Assembly: GCA_964057225.1 (NCBI GenBank)
Contig: OZ059895.1
Span: 21,080,001 to 21,144,000 of the forward strand
DNA length: 64,000 nucleotides
Direction: 5' to 3'
Origin: Auanema rhodensis
Lineage: Eukaryota; Animalia; Nematoda
Positions 4,045-64,000 of this stretch are shown here, in pieces. Made by a program: the position numbers and the translations under genes. How positions within the stretch are numbered: position 1 is the first letter of the stretch; every line of letters begins with the position of its first letter. Below the pieces are notes generated by a model, which saw only the letters and a list, made by a program, of their open reading frames with translations, was not told where the DNA came from and made no database searches.

Positions 4045-5280
4045 CTAATTAAGTGTACACATGATGTGCACTTGGTATGTAACTCGCTTCACGTGAAAGA
4101 TGAAGAGATGCGGTTTTCAAAAAAATTAGATTCCTCATGTCCATATTAGTCTAAAAACGATTTTTTATTGATATTGGTGCATGGTAACCATGACTTTGAA
4201 ATTTACGTGAACTTTAATTTATGCTTATTAAGTGTACACGTGATGTGCACTTGGTATGTAACTCGCTTCACGTGAAAGATAAAGGGATGCGGTTTTCAAA
4301 ATTAGATTCCCCATTTCCATATTAGTCTAAAAACAAATTTTTATTGATATTGGTGCATGGTAACCATGACTTTGAAATTTACGTGAACTTTAATTTATGC
4401 TAATTAAGTGTACACATGATGTGCACTTGGTATGTAACTCGCTTCACGTGAAAGATAAAGGGATGCGGTTTTCAAAATTAGATTCCCCATGTTCATATTA
4501 GTCTAAAAACAAATTTTTATTAATATTGGTGCATGGTAACCATGACTTTGAAATTTACGTGAACTTTAATTTATGCTAATTAAGTGTACACATGATATGC
4601 ACTTGGTATGTAACTCGCTTCACGTGAAAGATAAAGAGATGCGGTTTTCAAAATAGATTCCCCATTTCCATATTAGTCTAAAAACAAATTTTTATTGATA
4701 TTGGTGCATGGCAACCATGACTTTGAAATTTACGTGAACTTTAATTTATGCTAATTAAGTGTACACATGATATGCACTTGGTATGTAACTCGCTTCACGT
4801 CAAAGATAAAGAGATGCGGTTTTCAAAATTAGATTCCCCATGTCCATATTAGTCTAAAAACAAATTTTTATTAATATTGGTGCATGGAAACCATGACTTT
4901 GAAATTTACGTGAACTTTAATTTATGCTAATTAAGTGTACACATGATGTGCACTTGGTATGTAACTCGCTTCACGTGAAAGATGAAGAGATGCGGTTTTC
5001 AAAAAAATTAGATTCCTCATGTCCATATTAGTCTAAAAACGATTTTTTATTGATATTGGTGCATGGTAACCATGACTTTGAAATTTACGTGAACTTTAAT
5101 TTATGCTTATTAAGTGTACACGTGATGTGCACTTGGTATGTAACTCGCTTCACGTGAAAGATAAACGGATGCGGTTTTCAAAATTAGATTCCCCATTTCC
5201 ATATTAGTCTAAAAACAAATTTTTATTGATATTGGTGCATGGTAACCATGACTTTGAAATTTACGTGAACTTCAATTTAT
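4045..5280 (+). repeat. Partial 5-monomer duplication marked by a +3 A-run expansion
   Basis: CAAAAAAATTAGA (A7 instead of A4) with CGATTTTTT at 4119 and 5001; offset 882 = 5x176+3-1. Boundaries approximate. Confidence 0.75.
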
Positions 5281-6689: not shown

Positions 6690-9600
6690 CTAATTAAGTG
6701 TACACATGATGTGCACTTGGTATGTAACTCGCTTCACGTCAAAGATAAAGAGATGCGGTTTTCAAAATTAGATTCCCCATTTCCATATTAGTCTAAAAAC
6801 AAATTTTTATTGATATTGGTGCATGGTAACCATGACTTTGAAATTTACGTGAACTTTAATTTATGCTAATTAAGTGTACACATGATGTGCACTTGGTATG
6901 TAACTCGCTTCACGTCAAAGATAAAGAGATGCGGTTTTCAAAATTAGATTCCCCATGTCCATATTAGTCTAAAAACAAATTTTTATTGATATTGGTGCAT
7001 GGTAACCATGACTTTGAAATTTACGTGAACTTTAATTTATGCTAATTAAGTGTACACATGATGTGCACTTGGTATGTAACTCGCTTCACGTGAAAGATGA
7101 AGAGATGCGGTTTTCAAAATTAGATTCCTCATGTCCATATTAGTCTAAAAACAAATTTTTATTGATATTGGTGCATGGCAACCATGACTTTAAAATTTAC
7201 GTGAACTTTAATTTATGCTAATTAAGTGTACACATGATGTGCACTTGGTATGTAATTCGCTTCAAGTCAAAGATAAAGAGATGCGGTTTTCAAAATTAGA
7301 TTCCCTATGTCCATATTAGTCTAAAAACAAATTTTTATTAATATTGGTGAATGGTAACCATGACTTTGAAATTTACGTGAACTTTAATTTATGCTAATTA
7401 AGTGTACACATGATGTGCACTTGGTATGTAACTCGCTTCACGTGAAAGATGAAGAGATGCGGTTTTCAAAATTAGATTCCTCATGTCCATATTAGTCTAA
7501 ACACACATTTTTGTTGATATAGGTGGATGGTAACCATGACTTTGAAATTTACGTGAACTTCAATTTATGCTAATTAAGTGTACACATGATGTGCACTTGG
7601 TATGTAATTCGCTTCAAGTCAAAGATAAAGAGATGCGGTTTTCAAAATTAGATTCCCTATGTCCATATTAGTCTAAAAACAAATTTTTATTAATATTGGT
7701 GAATGGTAACCATGACTTTGAAATTTACGTGAACTTTAATTTATGCTAATTAAGTGTACACATGATGTGCACTTGGTATGTAACTCGCTTCACGTGAAAG
7801 ATAAAGAGATGCGGTTTTCAAAATAGATTCCCCATTTCCATATTAGTCTAAAAACAAATTTTTATTGATATTGCTGCATGGCAACCATGACTTTAAAATT
7901 TACGTGAACTTTAATTTATGCTAATTAAGTGTACACATGATGTGCACTTGGTATGTAACTCGCTTTACGTCAAAGATAAAGAGATGCGGTTTTCAAAATT
8001 AGATTCCCCATGTCCATATTAGTCTAAAAACAAATTTTTATTAATATTGGTGCATGGTAACCATGACTTTGAAATTTACGTGAACTTAAATTTATGCTAA
8101 TTAAGTGTACACATGATGTGCACTTGGTATGTAACTCGCTTCACGTCAAAGATAAAGAGATGCGGTTTTCAAAATTAGATTCCCCATGTCCATATTAGTC
8201 TAAAAACAAATTTTTATTAATATTGGTGAATGGTAACCATGACTTTGAAATTTACGTGAACTTTAATTTATGCTAATTAAGTGTACACATGATGTGCACT
8301 TGGTATGTAACTCGCTTCACGTGAAAGATGAAGAGATGCGGTTTTCAAAATTAGATTCCTCATGTCCATATTAGTCTAAAAACAAATTTTTATTGATATT
8401 GGTGCATGGCAACCATGACTTTGAAATTTACGTGAACTTTAATTTATGCTAATTAAGTGTACACATGATGTGCACTTGGTATGTAACTCGCTTCACGTGA
8501 AAGATGAAGAGATGCGGTTTTCAAAATTAGATTCCTCATGTCCATATTAGTCTAAAAACAAATTTTTATTGATATTGGTGCATGGCAACCATGACTTTAA
8601 AATTTACGTGAACTTTAATTTATGCTAATTAAGTGTACATATGATGTGCACTTGGTATGTAATTCGCTTCAAGTCAAAGATAAAGAGATGCGGTTTTCAA
8701 AATTAGATTCCCTATGTCCATATTAGTCTAAAAACAAATTTTTATTAATATTGGTGAATGGTAACCATGACTTTGAAATTTACGTGAACTTTAATTTATG
8801 CTAATTAAGTGTACACATGATGTGCACTTGGTATGTAACTCGCTTCACGTGAAAGATGAAGAGATGCGGTTTTCAAAATTAGATTCCTCATGTCCATATT
8901 AGTCTAAAAACACAATTTTGTTGATATAGGTGGATGGTAACCATGACTTTGAAATTTACGTGAACTTCAATTTATGCTAATTAAGTGTACACATGATGTG
9001 CACTTGGTATGTAATTCGCTTCAAGTCAAAGATAAAGAGATGCGGTTTTCAAAATTAGATTCCCTATGTCCATATTAGTCTAAAAACAAATTTTTATTAA
9101 TATTGGTGAATGGTAACCATGACTTTGAAATTTACGTGAACTTTAATTTATGCTAATTAAGTGTACACATGATGTGCACTTGGTATGTAACTCGCTTCAC
9201 GTGAAAGATAAAGAGATGCGGTTTTCAAAATAGATTCCCCATTTCCATATTAGTCTAAAAACAAATTTTTATTGATATTGGTGCATGGTAACCATGACTT
9301 TGAAATTTACGTGAACTTTAATTTATGCTTATTAAGTGTACACGTGATGTGCACTTGGTATGTAACTCGCTTCACGTGAAAGATGAAGAGATGCGGTTTT
9401 CAAAATTAGATTCCTCATGTCCATATTAGTCTAAAAACGAATTTTTATTGATATTGGTGCATGGCAACCATGACTTTAAAATTTACGTGAACTTTAATTT
9501 ATGCTAATTAAGTGTACATATGATGTGCACTTGGTATGTAATTCGCTTCAAGTCAAAGATAAAGAGATGCGGTTTTCAAAATTAGATTCCCTATGTCCAT

Positions 9601-27272: not shown

Positions 27273-30200
27273 CTAATTAAGTGTACACATGATGTGCACT
27301 TGGTATGTAACTCGCTTCACGTCAAAGATAAAGAGATGCGGTTTTCAAAATTAGATTCCCCATTTCCATATTAGTCTAAAAACAAATTTTTATTGATATT
27401 GGTGCATGGTAACCATGACTTTGAAATTTACGTGAACTTTAATTTATGCTAATTAAGTGTACACATGATGTGCACTTGGTATGTAACTCGCTTCACGTCA
27501 AAGATAAAGAGATGCGGTTTTCAAAATTAGATTCCCCATGTCCATATTAGTCTAAAAACAAATTTTTATTGATATTGGTGCATGGTAACCATGACTTTGA
27601 AATTTACGTGAACTTTAATTTATGCTAATTAAGTGTACACATGATGTGCACTTGGTATGTAACTCGCTTCACGTGAAAGATGAAGAGATGCGGTTTTCAA
27701 AATTAGATTCCTCATGTCCATATTAGTCTAAAAACAAATTTTTATTGATATTGGTGCATGGCAACCATGACTTTAAAATTTACGTGAACTTTAATTTATG
27801 CTAATTAAGTGTACACATGATGTGCACTTGGTATGTAATTCGCTTCAAGTCAAAGATAAAGAGATGCGGTTTTCAAAATTAGATTCCCTATGTCCATATT
27901 AGTCTAAAAACAAATTTTTATTAATATTGGTGAATGGTAACCATGACTTTGAAATTTACGTGAACTTTAATTTATGCTAATTAAGTGTACACATGATGTG
28001 CACTTGGTATGTAACTCGCTTCACGTGAAAGATGAAGAGATGCGGTTTTCAAAATTAGATTCCTCATGTCCATATTAGTCTAAACACACATTTTTGTTGA
28101 TATAGGTGGATGGTAACCATGACTTTGAAATTTACGTGAACTTCAATTTATGCTAATTAAGTGTACACATGATGTGCACTTGGTATGTAATTCGCTTCAA
28201 GTCAAAGATAAAGAGATGCGGTTTTCAAAATTAGATTCCCTATGTCCATATTAGTCTAAAAACAAATTTTTATTAATATTGGTGAATGGTAACCATGACT
28301 TTGAAATTTACGTGAACTTTAATTTATGCTAATTAAGTGTACACATGATGTGCACTTGGTATGTAACTCGCTTCACGTGAAAGATAAAGAGATGCGGTTT
28401 TCAAAATAGATTCCCCATTTCCATATTAGTCTAAAAACAAATTTTTATTGATATTGCTGCATGGCAACCATGACTTTAAAATTTACGTGAACTTTAATTT
28501 ATGCTAATTAAGTGTACACATGATGTGCACTTGGTATGTAACTCGCTTTACGTCAAAGATAAAGAGATGCGGTTTTCAAAATTAGATTCCCCATGTCCAT
28601 ATTAGTCTAAAAACAAATTTTTATTAATATTGGTGCATGGTAACCATGACTTTGAAATTTACGTGAACTTAAATTTATGCTAATTAAGTGTACACATGAT
28701 GTGCACTTGGTATGTAACTCGCTTCACGTCAAAGATAAAGAGATGCGGTTATCAAAATTAGATTCCCCATGTCCATATTAGTCTAAAAACAAATTTTTAT
28801 TAATATTGGTGCATGGTAACCATGACTTTGAAATTTACGTGAACTTTAATTTATGCTAATTAAGTGTACACATGATGTGCACTTGGTATGTAACTCGCTT
28901 CACGTGAAAGATGAAGAGATGCGGTTTTCAAAATTAGATTCCTCATGTCCATATTAGTCTAAAAACAAATTTTTATTGATATTGGTGCATGGCAACCATG
29001 ACTTTGAAATTTACGTGAACTTTAATTTATGCTAATTAAGTGTACACATGATGTGCACTTGGTATGTAACTCGCTTCACGTGAAAGATGAAGAGATGCGG
29101 TTTTCAAAATTAGATTCCTCATGTCCATATTAGTCTAAAAACAAATTTTTATTGATATTGGTGCATGGCAACCATGACTTTAAAATTTACGTGAACTTTA
29201 ATTTATGCTAATTAAGTGTACATATGATGTGCACTTGGTATGTAATTCGCTTCAAGTCAAAGATAAAGAGATGCGGTTTTCAAAATTAGATTCCCTATGT
29301 CCATATTAGTCTAAAAACAAATTTTTATTAATATTGGTGCATGGTAACCATGACTTTGAAATTTACGTGAACTTTAATTTATGCTAATTAAGTGTACACA
29401 TGATGTGCACTTGGTATGTAACTCGCTTCACGTGAAAGATGAAGAGATGCGGTTTTCAAAATTAGATTCCTCATGTCCATATTAGTCTAAAAACACATTT
29501 TTGTTGATATAGGTGGATGGTAACCATGACTTTGAAATTTACGTGAACTTCAATTTATGCTAATTAAGTGTACACATGATGTGCACTTGGTATGTAATTC
29601 GCTTCAAGTCAAAGATAAAGAGATGCGGTTTTCAAAATTAGATTCCCTATGTCCATATTAGTCTAAAAACAAATTTTTATTAATATTGGTGAATGGTAAC
29701 CATGACTTTGAAATTTACGTGAACTTTAATTTATGCTAATTAAGTGTACACATGATGTGCACTTGGTATGTAACTCGCTTCACGTGAAAGATAAAGAGAT
29801 GCGGTTTTCAAAATAGATTCCCCATTTCCATATTAGTCTAAAAACAAATTTTTATTGATATTGGTGCATGGTAACCATGACTTTGAAATTTACGTGAACT
29901 TTAATTTATGCTTATTAAGTGTACACGTGATGTGCACTTGGTATGTAACTCGCTTCACGTGAAAGATGAAGAGATGCGGTTTTCAAAATTAGATTCCTCA
30001 TGTCCATATTAGTCTAAAAACGAATTTTTATTGATATTGGTGCATGGCAACCATGACTTTAAAATTTACGTGAACTTTAATTTATGCTAATTAAGTGTAC
30101 ATATGATGTGCACTTGGTATGTAATTCGCTTCAAGTCAAAGATAAAGAGATGCGGTTTTCAAAATTAGATTCCCTATGTCCATATTAGTCTAAAAACAAA

Positions 30201-32559
30201 TTTTTATTAATATTGGTGAATGGTAACCATGACTTTGAAATTTACGTGAACTTTAATTTATGCTAATTAAGTGTACACATGATGTGCACTTGGTATGTAA
30301 CTCGCTTCACGTGAAAGATGAAGAGATGCGGTTTTCAAAATTAGATTCCTCATGTCCATATTAGTCTAAAAACACATTTTTGTTGATATAGGTGGATGGT
30401 AACCATGACTTTGAAATTTACGTGAACTTCAATTTATGCTAATTAAGTGTACACATGATGTGCACTTGGTATGTAATTCGCTTCAAGTCAAAGATAAAGA
30501 GATGCGGTTTTCAAAATTAGATTCCCTATGTCCATATTAGTCTAAAAACAAATTTTTATTAATATTGGTGAATGGTAACCATGACTTTGAAATTTACGTG
30601 AACTTTAATTTATGCTAATTAAGTGTACACATGATGTGCACTTGGTATGTAACTCGCTTCACGTGAAAGATAAAGAGATGCGGTTTTCAAAATAGATTCC
30701 CCATTTCCATATTAGTCTAAAAACAAATTTTTATTGATATTGCTGCATGGCAACCATGACTTTAAAATTTACGTGAACTTTAATTTATGCTAATTAAGTG
30801 TACACATGATGTGCACTTGGTATGTAACTCGCTTTACGTCAAAGATAAAGAGATGCGGTTTTCAAAATTAGATTCCCCATGTCCATATTAGTCTAAAAAC
30901 AAATTTTTATTAATATTGGTGCATGGTAACCATGACTTTGAAATTTACGTGAACTTAAATTTATGCTAATTAAGTGTACACATGATGTGCACTTGGTATG
31001 TAACTCGCTTCACGTCAAAGATAAAGAGATGCGGTTTTCAAAATTAGATTCCCCATGTCCATATTAGTCTAAAAACAAATTTTTATTAATATTGGTGCAT
31101 GGTAACCATGACTTTGAAATTTACGTGAACTTTAATTTATGCTAATTAAGTGTACACATGATGTGCACTTGGTATGTAACTCGCTTCACGTGAAAGATGA
31201 AGAGATGCGGTTTTCAAAATTAGATTCCTCATGTCCATATTAGTCTAAAAACAAATTTTTATTGATATTGGTGCATGGCAACCATGACTTTAAAATTTAC
31301 GTGAACTTTAATTTATGCTAATTAAGTGTACACATGATGTGCACTTGGTATGTAATTCGCTTCAAGTCAAAGATAAAGAGATGCGGTTTTCAAAATTAGA
31401 TTCCCTATGTCCATATTAGTCTAAAAACAAATTTTTATTAATATTGGTGAATGGTAACCATGACTTTGAAATTTACGTGAACTTTAATTTATGCTAATTA
31501 AGTGTACACATGATGTGCACTTGGTATGTAACTCGCTTCACGTGAAAGATGAAGAGATGCGGTTTTCAAAATTAGATTCCTCATGTCCATATTAGTCTAA
31601 AAACACATTTTTGTTGATATAGGTGGATGGTAACCATGACTTTGAAATTTACGTGAACTTCAATTTATGCTAATTAAGTGTACACATGATGTGCACTTGG
31701 TATGTAATTCGCTTCAAGTCAAAGATAAAGAGATGCGGTTTTCAAAATTAGATTCCCTATGTCCATATTAGTCTAAAAACAAATTTTTATTAATATTGGT
31801 GAATGGTAACCATGACTTTGAAATTTACGTGAACTTTAATTCATGCTAATTAAGTGTACACATGATGTGCACTTGGTATGTAACTCGCTTCACGTGAAAG
31901 ATAAAGAGATGCGGTTTTCAAAATAGATTCCCCATTTCCATATTAGTCTAAAAACAAATTTTTATTGATATTGCTGCATGGCAACCATGACTTTAAAATT
32001 TACGTGAACTTTAATTTATGCTAATTAAGTGTACACATGATGTGCACTTGGTATGTAACTCGCTTTACGTCAAAGATAAAGAGATGCGGTTTTCAAAATT
32101 AGATTCCCCATGTCCATATTAGTCTAAAAACAAATTTTTATTATTATTGGTGCATGGTAACCATGACTTTGAAATTTACGTGATCTTTAATTTATGCTAA
32201 TTAAGTGTACACATGATGTGCACTTGGTATGTAACTCGCTTTACGTCAAAGATAAAGAGATACGGTTTTTAAAATTAGATTCCCCATTTCCATGTTAGTC
32301 TAAAAACAAATTTTTATTGATATTGGTGCATGGCAACCATGACTTTAAAATTTACGTGAACTTAAATTTATGCTAATTAAGTGTACACATGTTGTGCACT
32401 TGGTATGTAACTCGCTTCACGTCAAAGATAAAGAGATGCGGTTTTCAAAATTAGATTCCCCATGTCCATATTAGTCTAAAAACAAATTTTTATTAATATT
32501 GGTGCATGGTAACCATGACTTTGAAATTTACGTGAACTTTAATTTATGCTAATTAAGTG
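27273..32559 (+). repeat. Long-range copy of 6690-11976 (offset 20,583)
   Basis: Same ordered series of diagnostic monomers, with a few differences (8229/28812, 8915/29498, private GGTTATCA at 28751). Confidence 0.88.
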
Positions 32560-54500: not shown

Positions 54501-57500
54501 ATGGTAACCATGACTTTGAAATTTACGTGAACTTTAATTTATGCTAATTAAGTGTACACATGATGTGCACTTGGTATGTAACTCGCTTCACGTCAAAGAT
54601 AAAGAGATGCGGTTTTCAAAATTAGATTCCCCATGTCCATATTAGTCTAAAAACAAATTTTTATTAATATTGGTGCATGGTAACCATGACTTTGAAATTT
54701 ACGTGAACTTTAATTTATGCTAATTAAGTGTACACATGATGTGCACTTGGTATGTAACTCGCTTAACGTGAAAGATGAAGAGATGCGGTTTTCAAAATTA
54801 GATTCCTCATGTCCATATTAGTCTAAAAACGAATTTTTATTGATATTGGTGCATGGTAACCATGACTTTGAAATTTACGTGAACTTTAATTTATGCTAAT
54901 TAAGTGTACACATGATGTGCACTTGGTATGTAACTCGCTTCATGTGAAAGATGAAGAGATGCGGTTTTCAAAATTAGATTCCTCATGTCCATATTAGTCT
55001 AAAAACAAATTTTTATTAATATTGGTGCATGGTAACCATGACTTTGAAATTTACGTGAACTTTAATTTATGCTTATTAAGTGTACACGTGATGTGCACTT
55101 GGTATGTAACTCGCTTCACGTGAAAGATAAAGGGGTGCGGTTTTCAAAATTAGATTCCCCATGTCCATATTAGTCTAAAAACAAATTTTTATTGATATTG
55201 GTGCATGGTAACCATGACTTTGAAATTTACGTGAACTTTAATTTATGCTAATTAAGTGTACACATGATGTGCACTCGGTATGTAACTCGCTTCACGTCAA
55301 AGATAAAGAGATGCGGTTTTCAAAATTAGATTCCCCATTTCCATGTTAGTCTAAAAACAAATTTTTATTGATATTGGTGCATGGTAACCATGACTTTGAA
55401 ATTTACGTGAACTTCAATTTATGCTAATTAAGTGTACACGTGATGTGCACTTGGTATGTAACTCGCTTCACGTGAAAGATGAAGAGATGCGGTTTTCAAA
55501 ATTAGATTCCCCATGTCCATATTAGTCTAAAAACACATTTTTGTTGATATTGGTGGATGGTAACCATGACTTTGAAATTTACGTGAACTTCAATTTATGC
55601 TAATTAAGTGTACACATGATGTGCACTTGGTATGTAACTCGCTTCAAGTCAAAGATAAAGAGATGCGGTTTTCAAAATTAGATTCCCTATGTCCATATTA
55701 GTCTGAAAACAAATTTTTATTAATATTGGTGCATGGTAACCATGACTTTGAAATTTACGTGAACTTTAATTTATGCTAATTAAGTGTACACATGATGTGC
55801 ACTTGGTATGTAACTCGCTTCACGTGAAAGATAAAGAGATGAGGTTTTCAAAATAGATTCCCCATTTCCATATTAGTCTAAAAACAAATTTTTATTGATC
55901 TTGGTGCATGGCAACCATGACTTTAAAATTTACGTGAACTTTAATTTATGCTAATTAAGTGTACACATGATGTGCACTTGGTATGTAACTCGCTTTACGT
56001 CAAAGATAAAGAGATGCGGTTTTCAAAATTAGATTCCCCATGTCCATATTAGTCTAAAAACAAATTTTTATTAATATTGGTGCATGGTAACCATGACTTT
56101 GAAATTTACGTGAACTTTAATTTATGCTAATTAAGTGTACACATGATGTGCGCTTGGTATGTAACTCGCTTCACGTGAAAGATAAAGAGATGCGGTTTTC
56201 AAAATTAGATTCCCCATTTCCATATTAGTCTAAAAACAAATTTTTATTGATATTGGTGCATGGCAACCATGACTTTAAAATTTACGTGAACTTTAATTTA
56301 TGCTAATTAAGTGTACACATGATGTGCACTTGGTATGTAACTCGCTTCACGTGAAAGATGAAGAGATGCGGTTTTCAAAATTAGATTCCCCATGTCCATA
56401 TTAGTCTAAAAACACATTTTTGTTGATATTGGTGGATGGTAACCATGACTTTGAAATTTACGTGAACTTCAATTTATGCTAATTAAGTGTACACATGATG
56501 TGCACTTGGTATGTAACTCGCTTCAAGTCAAAGATAAAGAGATGCGGTTTTCAAAATTAGATTCCCTATGTCCATATTAGTCTGAAAACAAATTTTTATT
56601 AATATTGGTGCATGGTAACCATGACTTTGAAATTTACGTGAACTTTAATTTATGCTAATTAAGTGTACACATGATGTGCACTTGGTATGTAACTCGCTTC
56701 ACGTGAAAGATAAAGAGATGCGGTTTTCAAAATAGATTCCCCATTTCCATATTAGTCTAAAAACAAATTTTTATTGATCTTGGTGCATGGCAACCATGAC
56801 TTTAAAATTTACGTGAACTTTAATTTATGCTAATTAAGTGTACACATGATGTGCACTTGGTATGTAACTCGCTTTACGTCAAAGATAAAGAGATGCGGTT
56901 TTCAAAATTAGATTCCCCATGTCCATATTAGTCTAAAAACAAATTTTTATTAATATTGGTGCATGGTAACCATGACTTTGAAATTTACGTGAACTTTAAT
57001 TTATGCTAATTAAGTGTACACATGATGTGCGCTTGGTATGTAACTCACTTCACGTGAAAGATAAAGAGATGCGGTTTTCAAAATTAGATTCCCCATTTCC
57101 ATATTAGTCTAAAAACAAATTTTTATTGATATTGGTGCATGGCAACCATGACTTTAAAATTTACGTGAACTTTAATTTATGCTAATTAAGTGTACACATG
57201 ATGTGCACTTGGTATGTAACTCGCTTCACGTCAAAGATAAAGAGATGCGGTTTTCAAAATTAGATTCCCCATGTCCATATTAGTCTAAAAACAAATTTTT
57301 ATTAATATTGGTGCATGGTAACCATGACTTTGAAATTTACGTGAACTTTAATTTATGCTAATTAAGTGTACACATGATGTGCACTTGGTATGTAACTCGC
57401 TTCACGTGAAAGATGAAGAGATGCGGTTTTCAAAATTAGATTCCTCATGTCCATATTAGTCTAAAAACGAATTTTTATTGATATTGATGCATGGTAACCA

Positions 57501-60500
57501 TGACTTTGAAATTTACGTGAACTTTAATTTATGCTTATTAAGTGTACACGTGATGTGCACTTGGTATGTAACTCGCTTCACGTGAAAGATGAAGAGATGC
57601 GGTTTTCAAAATTAGATTCCCCATGTCCATATTAGTCTAAAAACACATTTTTGTTGATATTGGTGGATGGTAACCATGACTTTGAAATTTACGTGAACTT
57701 CAATTTATGCTAATTAAGTGTACACATGATGTGCGCTTGGTATGTAACTCGCTTCAAGTCAAAGATAAAGAGATGCGGTTTTCAAAATTAGATTCCCCAT
57801 TTCCATATTAGTCTAAAAACAAATTTTTATTGATATTGGTGCATGGCAACCATGACTTTAAAATTTACGTGAACTTTAATTTATGCTAATTAAGTGTACA
57901 CATGATGTGCACTTGGTATGTAACTCGCTTCACGTCAAAGATAAAGAGATGCGGTTTTCAAAATTGGATTCCCCATGTCCATATTAGTCTAAAAACAAAT
58001 TTTTATTAATATTGGTGCATGGTAACCATGACTTTGAAATTTACGTGAACTTTAATTTATGCTAATTAAGTGTACACATGATGTGCACTTGGTATGTAAC
58101 TCGCTTCACGTGAAAGATGAAGAGATGCGGTTTTCAAAATTAGATTCCTCATGTCCATATTAGTCTAAAAACGAATTTTTATTGATATTGATGCATGGTA
58201 ACCATGACTTTGAAATTTACGTGAACTTTAATTTATGCTTATTAAGTGTACACGTGATGTGCACTTGGTATGTAACTCGCTTCACGTGAAAGATGAAGAG
58301 ATGCGGTTTTCAAAATTAGATTCCCCATGTCCATATTAGTCTAAAAACACATTTTTGTTGATATTGGTGGATGGTAACCATGACTTTGAAATTTACGTGA
58401 ACTTCAATTTATGCTAATTAAGTGTACACATGATGTGCACTTGGTATGTAACTCGCTTCAAGTCAAAGATAAAGAGATGCGGTTTTCAAAATTAGATTCC
58501 CTATGTCCATATTAGTCTGAAAACAAATTTTTATTAATATTGGTGCATGGTAACCATGACTTTGAAATTTACGTGAACTTTAATTTATGCTAATTAAGTG
58601 TACACATGATGTGCACTTGGTATGTAACTCGCTTCACGTGAAAGATAAAGAGATGCGGTTTTCAAAATAGATTCCCCATTTCCATATTAGTCTAAAAACA
58701 AATTTTTATTGATCTTGGTGCATGGCAACCATGACTTTAAAATTTACGTGAACTTTAATTTATGCTAATTAAGTGTACACATGATGTGCACTTGGTATGT
58801 AACTCGCTTTACGTCAAAGATAAAGAGATGCGGTTTTCAAAATTAGATTCCCCATGTCCATATTAGTCTAAAAACAAATTTTTATTAATATTGGTGCATG
58901 GTAACCATGACTTTGAAATTTACGTGAACTTTAATTTATGCTAATTAAGTGTACACATGATGTGCGCTTGGTATGTAACTCACTTCACGTGAAAGATAAA
59001 GAGATGCGGTTTTCAAAATTAGATTCCCCATTTCCATATTAGTCTAAAAACAAATTTTTATTGATATTGGTGCATGGCAACCATGACTTTAAAATTTACG
59101 TGAACTTTAATTTATGCTAATTAAGTGTACACATGATGTGCACTTGGTATGTAACTCGCTTCACGTGAAAGATGAAGAGATGCGGTTTTCAAAATTAGAT
59201 TCCTCATGTCCATATTAGTCTAAAAACGAATTTTTATTGATATTGATGCATGGTAACCATGACTTTGAAATTTACGTGAACTTTAATTTATGCTAATTAA
59301 GTGTACACATGATGTGCACTTGGTATGTAACTCGCTTCACGTGAAAGATGAAGAGATGCGGTTTTCAAAATTAGATTCCTCATGTCCATATTAGTCTAAA
59401 AACGAATTTTTATTGATATTGATGCATGGTAACCATGACTTTGAAATTTACGTGAACTTTAATTTATGCTTATTAAGTGTACACGTGATGTGCACTTGGT
59501 ATGTAACTCGCTTCACGTGAAAGATAAAGAGATGCGGTTTTCAAAATTAGATTCCCCTTGTCCATATTAGTCTAAAAACAAATTGTTATTGATATTGGTG
59601 CATGGTAACCATGACTTTAAAATTTACGTGAACTTTAATTTATGCTAATTAAGTGTACACATGATGTGCACTTGGTATGTAACTCGCTTCAAGTCAAAGA
59701 TAAAGAGATGCGGTTTCAAAATTAGATTCCTCATGTCCATATTAGTCTAAAAACGAATTTTCATTGATATTGATGCATGGTAACCATGACTTTGAAATTT
59801 ACGTGAACTTTAATTTATGCTAATTAAGTGTACACATGATGTGCACTTGGTATGTAACTCGCTTCACGTGAAAGATAAAGAGATGCGGTTTTCAAAATTA
59901 GATTCCCCATGTCCATATTAGTCTAAAAACAAATTTTTATTAATATTGGTGCATGGTAACCATGACTTTGAAATTTACGTGAACTTTAATTTATGCTATT
60001 TAAGTGTACACATGATGTGCACTTGGTATGTAACTCGCTTCACGTGAAAGATGAAGAGATGCGGTTTTCAAAATTAGATTCCTCATGTCCATATTAGTCT
60101 AAAAACGAATTTTTATTGATATTGATGCATGGTAACCATGACTTTGAAATTTACGTGAACTTTAATTTATGCTAATTAAGTGTACACATGATGTGCACTT
60201 GGTATGTAACTCGCTTCACGTGAAAGATGAAGAGATGCGGTTTTCAAAATTAGATTCCTCATGTCCATATTAGTCTAAAAACGAATTTTTATTGATATTG
60301 ATGCATGGTAACCATGACTTTGAAATTTACGTGAACTTTAATTTATGCTTATTAAGTGTACACGTGATGTGCACTTGGTATGTAACTCGCTTCACGTGAA
60401 AGATAAAGAGATGCGGTTTTCAAAATTAGATTCCCCTTGTCCATATTAGTCTAAAAACAAATTGTTATTGATATTGGTGCATGGTAACCATGACTTTAAA

Positions 60501-63010
60501 ATTTACGTGAACTTTAATTTATGCTAATTAAGTGTACACATGATGTGCACTTGGTATGTAACTCGCTTCAAGTCAAAGATAAAGAGATGCGGTTTCAAAA
60601 TTAGATTCCTCATGTCCATATTAGTCTAAAAACGAATTTTCATTGATATTGATGCATGGTAACCATGACTTTGAAATTTACGTGAACTTTAATTTATGCT
60701 AATTAAGTGTACACATGATGTGCACTTGGTATGTAACTCGCTTCAAGTCAAAGATAAAGAGATGCGGTTTTCAAAATTAGATTCCCTATGTCCATATTAG
60801 TCTAAAAACAAATTTTTATTAATATTGGTGCATGGTAACCATGACTTTGAAATTTACGTGAACTTTAATTTATGCTAATTAAGTGCACACATGATGTGCG
60901 CTTGGTATGTAACTCGCTTCACGTGAAAGATAAAGAGATGCGGTTTTCAAAATTAGATTCCCCATTTCCATATTAGTCTAAAAACAAATTTTTATTGATA
61001 TTGGTGCATGGCAACCATGACTTTAAAATTTACGTGAACTTTAATTTATGCTAATTAAGTGTACACATGATGTGCACTTGGTATGTAACTCGCTTCAAGT
61101 CAAAGATAAAGAGATGCGGTTTTCAAAATTAGATTCCTCATGTCCATATTAGTCTAAAAACGAATTTTCATTGATATTGATGCATGGTAACCATGACTTT
61201 GAAATTTACGTGAACTTTAATTTATGCTAATTAAGTGTACACATGATGTGCACTTGGTATGTAACTCGCTTCAAGTCAAAGATAAAGAGATGCGGTTTTC
61301 AAAATTAGATTCCCTATGTCCATATTAGTCTAAAAACAAATTTTTATTAATATTGGTGCATGGTAACCATGACTTTGAAATTTACGTGAACTTTAATTTA
61401 TGCTAATTAAGTGTACACATGATGTGCGCTTGGTATGTAACTCGCTTCACGTGAAAGATAAAGAGATGCGGTTTTCAAAATTAGATTCCCCATTTCCATA
61501 TTAGTCTAAAAACAAATTTTTATTGATATTGGTGCATGGCAACCATGACTTTAAAATTTACGTGAACTTTAATTTATGCTAATTAAGTGTACACATGATG
61601 TGCACTTGGTATGTAACTCGCTTTACGTCAAAGATAAAGAGATGCGGTTTTCAAAATTAGATTTCCCATGTCCATATTAGTCTAAAAACAAATTTTTATT
61701 AATATTGGTGCATGGTAACCATGACTTTAAAATTTACGTGAACTTTAATTTATGCTAATTAAGTGTACACATGATGTGCACTTGGTATGTAACTCGCTTC
61801 AAGTCAAAGATAAAGAGATGCGGTTTTCAAAATTAGATTCCTCATGTCCATATTAGTCTAAAAACGAATTTTCATTGATATTGATGCATGGTAACCATGA
61901 CTTTGAAATTTACGTGAACTTTAATTTATGCTAATTAAGTGTACACATGATGTGCACTTGGTATGTAACTCGCTTCAAGTCAAAGATAAAGAGATGCGGT
62001 TTTCAAAATTAGATTCCCTATGTCCATATTAGTCTAAAAACAAATTTTTATTAATATTGGTGCATGGTAACCATGACTTTGAAATTTACGTGAACTTTAA
62101 TTTATGCTAATTAAGTGTACACATGATGTGCGCTTGGTATGTAACTCGCTTCACGTGAAAGATAAAGAGATGCGGTTTTCAAAATTAGATTCCCCATTTC
62201 CATATTAGTCTAAAAACAAATTTTTATTGATATTGGTGCATGGCAACCATGACTTTAAAATTTACGTGAACTTTAATTTATGCTAATTAAGTGTACACAT
62301 GATGTGCACTTGGTATGTAACTCGCTTTACGTCAAAGATAAAGAGATGCGGTTTTCAAAATTAGATTTCCCATGTCCATATTAGTCTAAAAACAAATTTT
62401 TATTAATATTGGTGCATGGTAACCATGACTTTAAAATTTACGTGAACTTTAATTTATGCTAATTAAGTGTACACATGATGTGCACTTGGTATGTAACTCG
62501 CTTCACGTCAAAGATAAAGAGATGCGGTTTTCAAAATTAGATTCCCCATGTCCATATTAGTCTAAAAACAAATTTTCATTAATATTGGTGCATGGTAACC
62601 ATGACTTTGAAATTTACGTGAACTTTAATTTATGCTAATTAAGTGTACACATGATGTGCACTTGGTATGTAACTCGCTTCACGTGAAAGATGAAGAGATG
62701 CGGTTTTCAAAATTAGATTCCTCATGTCCATATTAGTCTAAAAACGAATTTTTATTGATATTGATGCATGGTAACCATGACTTTGAAATTTACGTGAACT
62801 TTAATTTATGCTTATTAAGTGTACACGTGATGTGCACTTGGTATGTAACTCGCTTCACGTGAAAGATAAAGAGATGCGGTTTTCAAAATTAGATTCCCAA
62901 TGTCCATATTAGTCTAAAAACAAATTGTTATTGATATTGGTGCATGGTAACCATGACTTTAAAATTTACGTGAACTTTAATTTATGCTAATTAAGTGTAC
63001 ACATGATGTG

Positions 63011-63287
63011 TGTTTTTAGACTAATATGGACATGGGGAATCTAATTTTGAAAACCGCATCTCTTTATCTTTGACGTAAAGCGAGTTACATACCAAGTGCA
63101 CATCATGTGTACACTTAATTAGCATAAATTAAAGTTCACGTAAATTTTAAAGTCATGGTTGCCATGCACCAAGATCAATAAAAATTTGTTTTTAGACTAA
63201 TATGGAAATGGGGAATCTATTTTGAAAACCGCATCTCTTTATCTTTCACGTGAAGCGAGTTACATACCAAGTGCACATCATGTGTAC
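63011..63287 (-). repeat. 277-bp inverted satellite segment (position 11 of a 175-bp monomer through position 112 of the next monomer)
   Basis: TGTTTTTAGACTAATATGGACATGGGGAATC...GTGCACATCATGTGTAC is the reverse complement of the satellite; length 165+112 = 277. Followed by a TG filler (63288-63289); forward satellite resumes at monomer position 100. Confidence 0.96.
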
Positions 63288-63337
63288 TGTAGTCTAAAAA
63301 CAAATTTTTATTAATATTGGTGCATGGTAACCATGAC

Positions 63338-63387
63338 TTTGAAATTTACGTGAACTTTAATTTTTGAAATTTACGTGAACTTTAATT
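63338..63387 (+). repeat. 25-bp sub-monomer tandem duplication (TTTGAAATTTACGTGAACTTTAATT x2)
   Basis: GAAATTTACGTGAAC at 63341 and 63366; the junction lies in a T-run. Confidence 0.93.
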
Positions 63388-64000
63388 TATGCTAATTAAG
63401 TGTACACATGATGTGCACTTGGTATGTAACTCGCTTCACGTGAAAGATGAAGAGATGCGGTTTTCAAAATTAGATTCCCCATGTCCATATTAGTCTAAAA
63501 ACAAATTTTTATTGATATTGATGCATGGTAACCATGACTTTGAAATTTACGTGAACTTTAATTTATGCTAATTAAGTGTACACATGATGTGCACTTGGTA
63601 TGTAACTCGCTTCACGTCAAAGATAAAGAGATGCGGTTTTCAAAAATAGATTCCCCATGTCCATATTAGTCTAAAAACAAATTTTTATTAATATTGGTGC
63701 TTGGTAACCATGACTTTGAAATTTACGTGAACTTTAATTTATGCTAATTAAGTGTACACATGATGTGAACTTGGTATGTAACTCGCTTCACGTCAAAGAT
63801 AAAGAGATGCGGTTTTCAAAATTAGATTCCCCATGTCCATATTAGTCTAAAAACAAATTTTTATTGATATTGGTGCATGGTAACCATGACTTTAAAATTT
63901 ACGTGAACTTTAATTTATGCTAATTAAGTGTACACATGATGTGCACTTGGTATGTAACTCGCTTCACGTGAAAGATGAAGAGATGCGGTTTTTAAAATTA

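What the first reader, a model, noticed from the sequence alone, without database searches (positions are those of the whole stretch)
62987..63302. In-place micro-inversion with inverted duplications at both breakpoints (staggered-break signature)
Seen: monomer A (start 62987) runs forward to position 24. The reverse complement of A11-B112 follows (63011-63287), then a 2-nt filler TG, then forward B resumes at position 100. A11-24 (14 bp, GTACACATGATGTG) and B100-112 (13 bp, TAGTCTAAAAACA) are therefore each present twice in opposite orientation. Flipping the segment back rebuilds the A-B pair seen at 56655 and 58590 (175-bp GATCTTGG/GGCAACC monomer, then CTTTACGTC monomer), and the downstream B tail matches that B type. 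Lengths close exactly: 175+176+14+13+2+25 leads to the next monomer at 63392. Established: inverted duplications at both breakpoints are what the staggered-break inversion model predicts. Inference: two breaks of similar 13-14 nt stagger about 265 bp apart were filled in and end-joined, rather than resolved by homologous exchange. This is the only strand switch in 64 kb.
Basis: partly seen in the sequence, partly recalled or inferred. Interest (0 to 1): 0.8.

Follow-up and report, generated by a model that had tools for sequence, protein, structure and literature searches.

The report
Flipped 277-bp patch in worm satellite
A 277-letter stretch of a repeat array that the nematode Auanema rhodense keeps only in its germline is turned around in place, with 14 and 13 letters copied at its two ends and a 25-letter doubling beside it. 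It is a real, inherited repair scar of a known kind, not a new kind of element.

Summary
Forward monomer A stops at position 24 (63010). Bases 63011-63287 are the exact reverse complement of A11-B112. A 2-nt TG follows, and forward B resumes at position 100 (63290). Undoing the flip and the neighbouring 25-bp tandem duplication rebuilds an A-B pair that matches 56655 and 58590 at 351 of 351 bases.

New points:
- Both inversion junctions and the 25-bp duplication junction each occur exactly twice in the 181-Mb genome. They are always together, here and 1,165,678 bp downstream, in collinear paralogous array segments. The scar is therefore not a chimeric-read artefact, it predates a large array duplication, and it is one three-junction event.
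- All three junctions gain sequence (14, 13 and 25 nt) and join with 0, 0 (+TG) and 1 nt of microhomology, which is chance level.
- The footprint fits the staggered-break model. It equally fits the published template-switch type "3-1-4-2".
- Breakpoints do not recur. Two other micro-inversions in this satellite have different geometries.

I lean to fill-in and homology-independent end joining (0.45) over replicative template switching (0.35). Public reads could not test the junctions. The scan's first readers had also noted the second copy. This is a new member of a known kind, of modest interest.

The parts
62987..63010 (+). Forward head of monomer A (positions 1-24). Its last 14 nt (62997-63010, A11-24) are the left copy of the first inverted duplication.
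63011..63287 (-). Inverted segment: the exact reverse complement of A11-A175 plus B1-B112 (277 bp). 63011-63023 is the inverted copy of B100-112. 63274-63287 is the inverted copy of A11-24.
63288..63289 (.). Filler TG of 2 nt at the right junction. No word of 5 nt or more that contains it occurs in the local ancestral sequence on either strand.
63290..63391 (+). Forward tail of monomer B from position 100. 63290-63302 is the forward copy of B100-112. The tail carries the 123A variant of the B type seen at 56830 and 58765.
63338..63387 (+). Tandem duplication of 25 bp (B148-172, two copies), joined with 1 nt of microhomology. It lies 48 nt right of the point where forward B resumes. Its junction is found in the genome only at the two inversion loci.
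56655..57005 (+). Intact A-B pair (175+176 bp), identical to the restored pair. It stands in for the ancestral state.
58590..58940 (+). Second intact A-B pair, identical to the restored pair.
61979..63617 (+). Tract of 1,639 bp that differs at only 3 positions (62899, 62961, 63110) from the second copy at G000:C3:22308665 onward. It contains all three junctions.

Best explanation
This is one complex break-repair event in the germline-restricted AT-1 satellite of Auanema rhodense. Three nearby break sites each carried a single-stranded overhang: A11-24, B100-112 and B148-172. The overhangs were filled in, so each site was copied onto both of its ends. The ends were then joined without use of homology. 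The roughly 265-bp middle fragment went back in flipped, which gives the 14-nt and 13-nt inverted duplications, and 2 untemplated nt were added at one joint. The third break was resealed in the original orientation, which gives the 25-bp tandem duplication. The scar was then inherited, and later copied when a large part of the array was duplicated.

Shown: the structure, its in-place geometry, its reality, the linkage of the three junctions, and the lack of microhomology.

Inferred: the overhangs, the fill-in and the joining pathway.
For: - Structure and exact restoration to a 351/351 A-B pair.
- All three junctions are of the overlap (gain) type: 14, 13 and 25 nt.
- Microhomology is 0, 0 (+TG, untemplated) and 1 nt. 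Nine junctions of three AT-1 micro-inversions average 0.67 nt, against 0.79-0.80 expected for random joins in this satellite.
- The 25-bp duplication junction and both inversion junctions each occur exactly twice in 181 Mb, always together.
- The two loci sit in collinear but differently expanded array segments, so this is an inherited scar and not a read chimera.
- The model has published precedent. Staggered breaks with fill-in and NHEJ give inversions flanked by inverted duplications (PMC1885836). Filled-in overhangs joined by NHEJ give small tandem duplications (PMC8355091).
Against: - The same sequence is produced by replicative template switching (PMC5453318 type 3-1-4-2) followed by a 25-nt backward slip.
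- No independent trace of nicks or overhangs can exist in a finished sequence.
- Three staggered breaks within 380 bp need a cause that I cannot name.
- From my own knowledge, not tested here: classical NHEJ is thought to contribute little in the C. elegans germline.
- The duplications are shorter than any in the Drosophila set (minimum 46 bp).
- Public reads could not confirm the junctions.
Confidence: 0.45

Rival explanations
1. Replicative template switching. A nascent strand stalled at A24 and switched to the opposite parental strand about 263 nt ahead, at B112. It copied back to A11 and returned to the original template at B100. This is four-point type 3-1-4-2. It then slipped back 25 nt at B172. 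That makes three switches in one replication episode.
For: - The order of switch points 3<1<4<2 and the product, two inverted repeats around an inverted spacer, match the published type exactly.
- A cluster of several junctions within a few hundred bp is typical of multi-switch replication errors. It is also seen at another AT-1 micro-inversion with four junctions in 660 bp.
- No multiple staggered breaks need to be assumed.
Against: - Neither strand switch has a single base of terminal complementarity to prime on the new template, and one has an untemplated TG. Microhomology overall is at chance level.
- The copied fragment (277 nt) is much longer than the tens of bp that the short-range model was built for. 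That model explicitly does not cover successive rounds of switching.
Confidence: 0.35
2. Offset breaks on two sister chromatids, or replication of a resected broken end before fusion. The left and right flanks come from one chromatid and the slightly longer middle fragment from the other. They are joined by NHEJ with no fill-in step.
For: [quoted passage not shown]
- The breakage-replication/fusion model derives adjacent offset breakpoints from one staggered end (PMC12807874).
- The blunt junctions fit.
Against: It needs up to six breaks on two chromatids, all within 13-25 nt of their partners. Nothing in the sequence distinguishes it from the fill-in version.
Confidence: 0.1
3. The inverted piece was copied from another identical A-B pair, for example at 56655 or 58590 or on the sister chromatid. 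It replaced whatever stood at this position instead of being the local piece flipped.
For: The patch is 100% identical to those two pairs. In a tandem array, an in-register non-local template gives the same phase closure.
Against: - The forward B tail outside the patch carries the variant of the same B type. That tail is present in only 16-21% of monomers, which gives about 5-fold support for an in-place origin.
- The missing forward interval A25-B99 is exactly what the patch contains.
- The immediate neighbours differ from the patch by 9-14 edits, so they were not the template.
Confidence: 0.07
4. Assembly or sequencing artefact, such as a chimeric or misjoined long read.
For: The junctions could not be verified in raw reads. 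The only public runs on offer are short-read contigs of about 60 bp that cannot bridge them.
Against: All three junctions occur at two loci 1.17 Mb apart. These differ at 3 positions within 1.6 kb and have differently expanded flanks. One bad read cannot produce that. The assembly is from HiFi reads at about 29x in these blocks.
Confidence: 0.03

Closest known systems
Staggered-break inversions with inverted duplications at both breakpoints (Ranz et al. 2007, Drosophila melanogaster group; PMC1885836)
   Same: An in-place inversion. Sequence that was single-copy at each breakpoint is now present twice in opposite orientation. There are no pre-existing inverted repeats. The junctions are of the non-homologous type.
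   Different: The scale is very different: a 277-bp inversion with 13-14-bp duplications, against megabase inversions with 46 bp to 1.9 kb duplications. It lies inside a satellite. It is accompanied by a third junction, the 25-bp tandem duplication.
Short template-switch mutations, four-point model type 3-1-4-2 (Loytynoja and Goldman 2017; PMC5453318)
   Same: [quoted passage not shown] This was the rarest class in that study, about 1% of human-chimp events.
   Different: The copied fragment is 277 nt, not tens of nt. The event has an extra junction that a single switch-and-return does not cover. No base pairing is available at either switch.
Small tandem duplications from filled-in overhangs joined by NHEJ (Schimmel et al. 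2021; PMC8355091)
   Same: The 25-bp tandem duplication with a near-blunt junction is the expected product of a staggered break resealed after fill-in.
   Different: That work was done at nickase-induced breaks in mammalian cells. Here the break source, the polarity of the overhang and the enzymes are unknown.
Fold-back inverted duplications and strand switches in the same genome's satellites
   Same: A strand switch inside a tandem array, created by break repair.
   Different: The junctions here are not mirror-symmetric, and the patch is not a back-copy of its neighbours (9-14 edits). Orientation also returns to forward after 277 bp.

Membership tests
Staggered-break inversion (Ranz 2007 model) | The segment is inverted in place, and flipping it restores the ancestral order. 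| tested here: met
   The restored A+B matches the intact pairs at 351 of 351 bases, and the length closes at 405.
Staggered-break inversion (Ranz 2007 model) | Inverted duplications of formerly single sequence at both breakpoints. | tested here: met
   A11-24 (14 nt) and B100-112 (13 nt) are each present once forward and once inverted.
Staggered-break inversion (Ranz 2007 model) | Junctions joined without homology (NHEJ type). | tested here: met
   Microhomology is 0 nt and 0 nt plus a TG filler. This is chance level.
Staggered-break inversion (Ranz 2007 model) | Paired single-strand nicks giving overhangs that are filled in. | not testable with these tools
   A finished sequence keeps no trace of these. 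It would need induced nicks or repair mutants.
Four-point template-switch mutation, type 3-1-4-2 | The middle fragment is the reverse complement of local sequence, and the switch points are ordered 3<1<4<2. | tested here: met
   Point 3 = A11, 1 = A24, 4 = B100, 2 = B112.
Four-point template-switch mutation, type 3-1-4-2 | A single short-range switch-and-return explains the whole cluster. | tested here: not met
   A third junction, the 25-bp duplication exclusive to these loci, lies outside the model. The fragment is 277 nt.
MMBIR/FoSTeS (microhomology-mediated replicative rearrangement) | Microhomology at the junctions. | tested here: not met
   0, 0 and 1 nt here. The mean over nine junctions in this satellite is 0.67 nt, against 0.79-0.80 expected by chance.
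Polymerase-theta end joining with templated insertion | The filler is copied from nearby sequence, with at least 1 nt of priming homology. | tested here: not met
   No word of 5 nt or more containing TG occurs within one monomer on either side of the A-B pair, on either strand. J1 and J2 have 0 nt of homology. A 2-nt filler is too short for a strong test.
NAHR inversion between inverted repeats | Inverted repeats existed at the breakpoints before the event. | tested here: not met
   The array is uniformly oriented over 252 kb and 50 kb. The short inverted repeats are products of the event.
Fold-back inverted duplication | The inverted part is a back-copy of the adjoining sequence, around a near-symmetric junction. 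| tested here: not met
   The patch differs by 14 and 9 edits from its left and right neighbours in the same phase. The junction phases are 24|112 and 11|100.
Assembly artefact | The junctions are unique to one place and rest on a single read. | tested here: not met
   Two loci with diverged flanks carry all three junctions. Read-level support was not testable.

The most novel reading that the evidence does not exclude
Clusters of overhang-bearing breaks that are filled in and joined without homology may be a regular way in which the germline-only satellites of this DNA-eliminating nematode change. That would point to a blunt end-joining activity in a rhabditid germline, where homologous repair and polymerase-theta joining are thought to dominate. 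Such scars could also serve as dated markers of how megabase arrays are copied.
Probability: 0.12. Interest if true: 0.55.

Novelty: new member of a known kind. Interest (0 to 1): 0.3.

Why it matters
This is a base-resolved, noise-free example of a rare rearrangement footprint. The ancestral state is known exactly from identical sister units, so every junction can be read without ambiguity.

It shows that the published staggered-break and template-switch models converge on one product. What separates them here is junction detail: no microhomology, an untemplated filler, and a linked tandem duplication.

The scar also marks two array segments 1.17 Mb apart as descendants of one duplicated block. 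That is useful for reconstructing how the multi-megabase eliminated arrays of Auanema rhodense grew. It does not reveal a new element or function.

Tried and rejected
- **Read support.** The only public runs on offer are Logan short-read contigs. Laid on 62850-63480, they gave about 60-bp pieces and no piece bridging a junction. This is uninformative, neither for nor against.
- **Fixed-offset comparison of the two copies.** It suggested only a 1.6-kb shared tract. That was misleading, because monomer-number differences shift the register. Exact-match blocks show wide collinearity.
- **Cataloguing the 1.2 Mb between the copies.** I replaced this with genome-wide gapped pattern searches.
- **Templated origin of the TG filler.** None found.
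- **Fold-back copy of neighbours.** Rejected.
- **Recurrent breakpoints.** Rejected.
- I re-ran it with the consensus computed from the window.

Full report
**What the window is**

The whole 64 kb is one tandem array of a 176-bp, 32% G+C unit. The window is G000:C3:21080001-21144000 in a 180,911,798-base assembly. Earlier notes of this scan named the nematode Auanema rhodense, and I checked that lead in two ways.
- The preprint 10.64898/2026.08.27.747507 reports a 180.9-Mb HiFi plus Hi-C germline assembly of inbred line APS4. Most germline-restricted DNA there is satellite, covered about 29-fold.
- Its FISH probe for the autosomal terminal eliminated repeat AT-1 matches the window 301 times with 2 mismatches or fewer, several times exactly, against 0 expected by chance.

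So this is the AT-1 satellite, which is discarded from somatic cells. One 26-mer of the unit has 124,614 exact copies genome-wide, which corresponds to at least 22 Mb.

**The observation**

A strand-specific k-mer scan finds one reversed run, at about 63009-63287. Unit spacing is 176 or 175 throughout, except for two 179-bp units and one 405-bp interval from 62987 to 63392.

Base by base:
- Forward A1-24 ends at 63010.
- 63011-63287 is the reverse complement of A11-A175 plus B1-B112 (277 bp).
- TG occupies 63288-63289.
- Forward B resumes at position 100, at 63290.

A11-24 (14 nt) and B100-112 (13 nt) are therefore each present twice, in opposite orientation. The restored A is identical to the 175-bp units at 56655 and 58590. 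After the flip and the 25-bp duplication are undone, A+B has 0 differences over 351 bp from both pairs.

**Is it in place?**

- The patch contains exactly the forward interval that is missing (A25-B99), plus the two overlaps.
- It differs by 14 and 9 edits from the same-phase stretches of its left and right neighbours, so it is not a fold-back copy of them.
- The forward B tail outside the patch carries the variant of the same B type. Only 16-21% of units have that tail.

An in-register copy from another identical A-B pair cannot be formally excluded in a tandem array, but it is about five times less likely on this marker.

**Is it real?**

Public reads did not help. All the runs offered are short-read contigs of about 60 bp, and none bridges a junction. 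The genome itself answers the question.
- Each junction word, even with up to 3 mismatches allowed, occurs exactly twice: here and at C3:22308675-22308983, which is 1,165,678 bp downstream, on the same strand and with the same spacing.
- The two loci differ at 3 positions within 1,639 bp around the scar.
- Exact-match blocks of 400 bp or more show that about 80 kb here is collinear with the 50 kb I could read there. The copy numbers of internal higher-order units differ, and one extra block of about 6.5 kb lies right of the scar in the second copy.

A chimeric read cannot create the same three junctions in two diverged contexts. The scar is inherited and older than a large duplication of this array segment. 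If the second locus were an unpurged haplotig, the scar would still be real.

**The 25-bp duplication belongs to the event**

B148-172 is tandemly duplicated at 63338-63387. Its junction, with up to 2 mismatches allowed, occurs only twice in 181 Mb, both times beside the inversion. Neither inversion junction occurs without it. In 302 kb of array, I found only three other length changes of more than 2 bp. Chance proximity within 100 bp therefore has a probability of roughly 0.001. The event thus has three junctions within 380 bp, and all three gain sequence: 14, 13 and 25 nt.

**Junction chemistry**

Measured against the exact ancestral pair:
- Junction 1 has 0 nt of microhomology.
- Junction 2 has 0 nt plus TG. 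No word of 5 nt or more that contains this TG occurs in the local sequence on either strand.
- The duplication junction has 1 nt.

For context I located all strand switches of this satellite that keep a 16-nt probe word on both sides. There are 25 head-to-head and 32 tail-to-tail sites genome-wide, roughly one of each per megabase. Only three events are micro-inversions of 600 bp or less: this one (two copies), one on C4 and one on C81. I dissected both.
- C4 has an 80-bp inverted piece with a 3-nt loss on one side and a 59-nt overlap on the other. This is type 1-3-4-2.
- C81 has four junctions in 660 bp, including a 465-bp inverted piece and two deletions.

The nine junctions show microhomology of 0, 0, 1; 1, 0; and 3, 1, 0, 0 nt. 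The mean is 0.67, equal to the 0.79-0.80 expected for random joins in this sequence. Breakpoints do not recur, and there is no constant stagger.

**Mechanism**

Two published models predict this exact product.
- Ranz et al. (PMC1885836) proposed paired staggered nicks, fill-in of the overhangs and non-homologous joining. This gives inversions flanked by inverted duplications, 46 bp to 1.9 kb in flies. They noted that offset breaks on sister chromatids give the same pattern.
[quoted passage not shown] This was 1% of their events.

Here 3 = A11, 1 = A24, 4 = B100 and 2 = B112.

What tips the balance slightly towards end joining:
- Both strand switches lack even one base of terminal pairing, which a polymerase needs in order to restart on a new template.
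- One junction carries an untemplated dinucleotide.
- Microhomology is at chance level across this satellite's micro-inversions.
- The linked tandem duplication is the documented product of a filled-in staggered break resealed by NHEJ (PMC8355091).

What argues the other way:
- Three staggered breaks within 380 bp need an unexplained cause.
- Multi-junction clusters are typical of repeated template switching.
- From my own knowledge, not tested here: classical end joining is thought to be minor in the C. elegans germline.

The breakage-replication/fusion scheme (PMC12807874) is a further way to obtain offset ends. My odds are 0.45 for fill-in and end joining, 0.35 for template switching, 0.10 for the sister-offset variant, 0.07 for a non-local template, and 0.03 for an artefact.

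**Verdict**

This is a genuine, inherited, three-junction micro-rearrangement of a known kind in a newly described germline-only satellite. It is a clean teaching example and a useful marker of array history, but it is not a new mechanism or element. First readers of this scan had also flagged the second copy and the same stretch in an overlapping window.

**Limits**

No long reads were available. Only 314 kb of the array could be read. The genome-wide count of strand switches misses sites whose probe words are mutated.

Noticed in passing
G000:C3:22308665-22309070 (L002, L004; c2 29987-30391): A second, near-identical copy of the whole scar (inversion, TG filler and 25-bp duplication) lies 1,165,678 bp downstream in a collinear paralogous array segment. 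It has one difference inside the inverted piece, at the position equivalent to window 63110.
   Followed up: yes
window 11500-49000: A higher-order repeat of 5,454 bp (31 units) is present in about seven copies here, but only once or twice in the paralogous segment at C3:22.28 Mb. Array segments expand and contract by whole higher-order units.
   Followed up: partly
L024:9918 to about L025:4700 (G000:C3:21263918-21268700): A non-satellite insertion of about 4.7 kb interrupts one AT-1 unit after position 16. It ends with three tandem copies of a 17-nt G+C-rich word before the satellite resumes. It is probably a mobile element.
   Followed up: no
L031, near position 7815 (G000:C3:~21331815): The AT-1 array ends abruptly inside a unit at about position 85. 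A different repeated sequence, with a unit of roughly 350 bp, begins there.
   Followed up: no
L033:1432-1526 (G000:C4:23249257-23249351): Another AT-1 micro-inversion. An 80-bp inverted piece has a 3-nt loss at the left breakpoint and a 59-nt inverted duplication at the right. This is four-point type 1-3-4-2. It occurs once in the genome.
   Followed up: partly
L034:1512-2174 (G000:C81:370613-371275): A complex AT-1 rearrangement with four junctions in 660 bp: an 80-nt deletion with 3-nt microhomology, a 465-bp inverted piece, a 1-nt filler and a blunt 38-nt deletion.
   Followed up: partly
G000:C1:5187155-5187341: A head-to-head AT-1 strand switch whose junction holds a long A-run filler of more than 40 nt, interrupted by GG. 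This is unlike the blunt junctions studied here.
   Followed up: no
window 4045-4223 and 4927-5105: Two 179-bp units (a 3-bp insertion) are the only other units in the window that are not 175 or 176 bp long.
   Followed up: no
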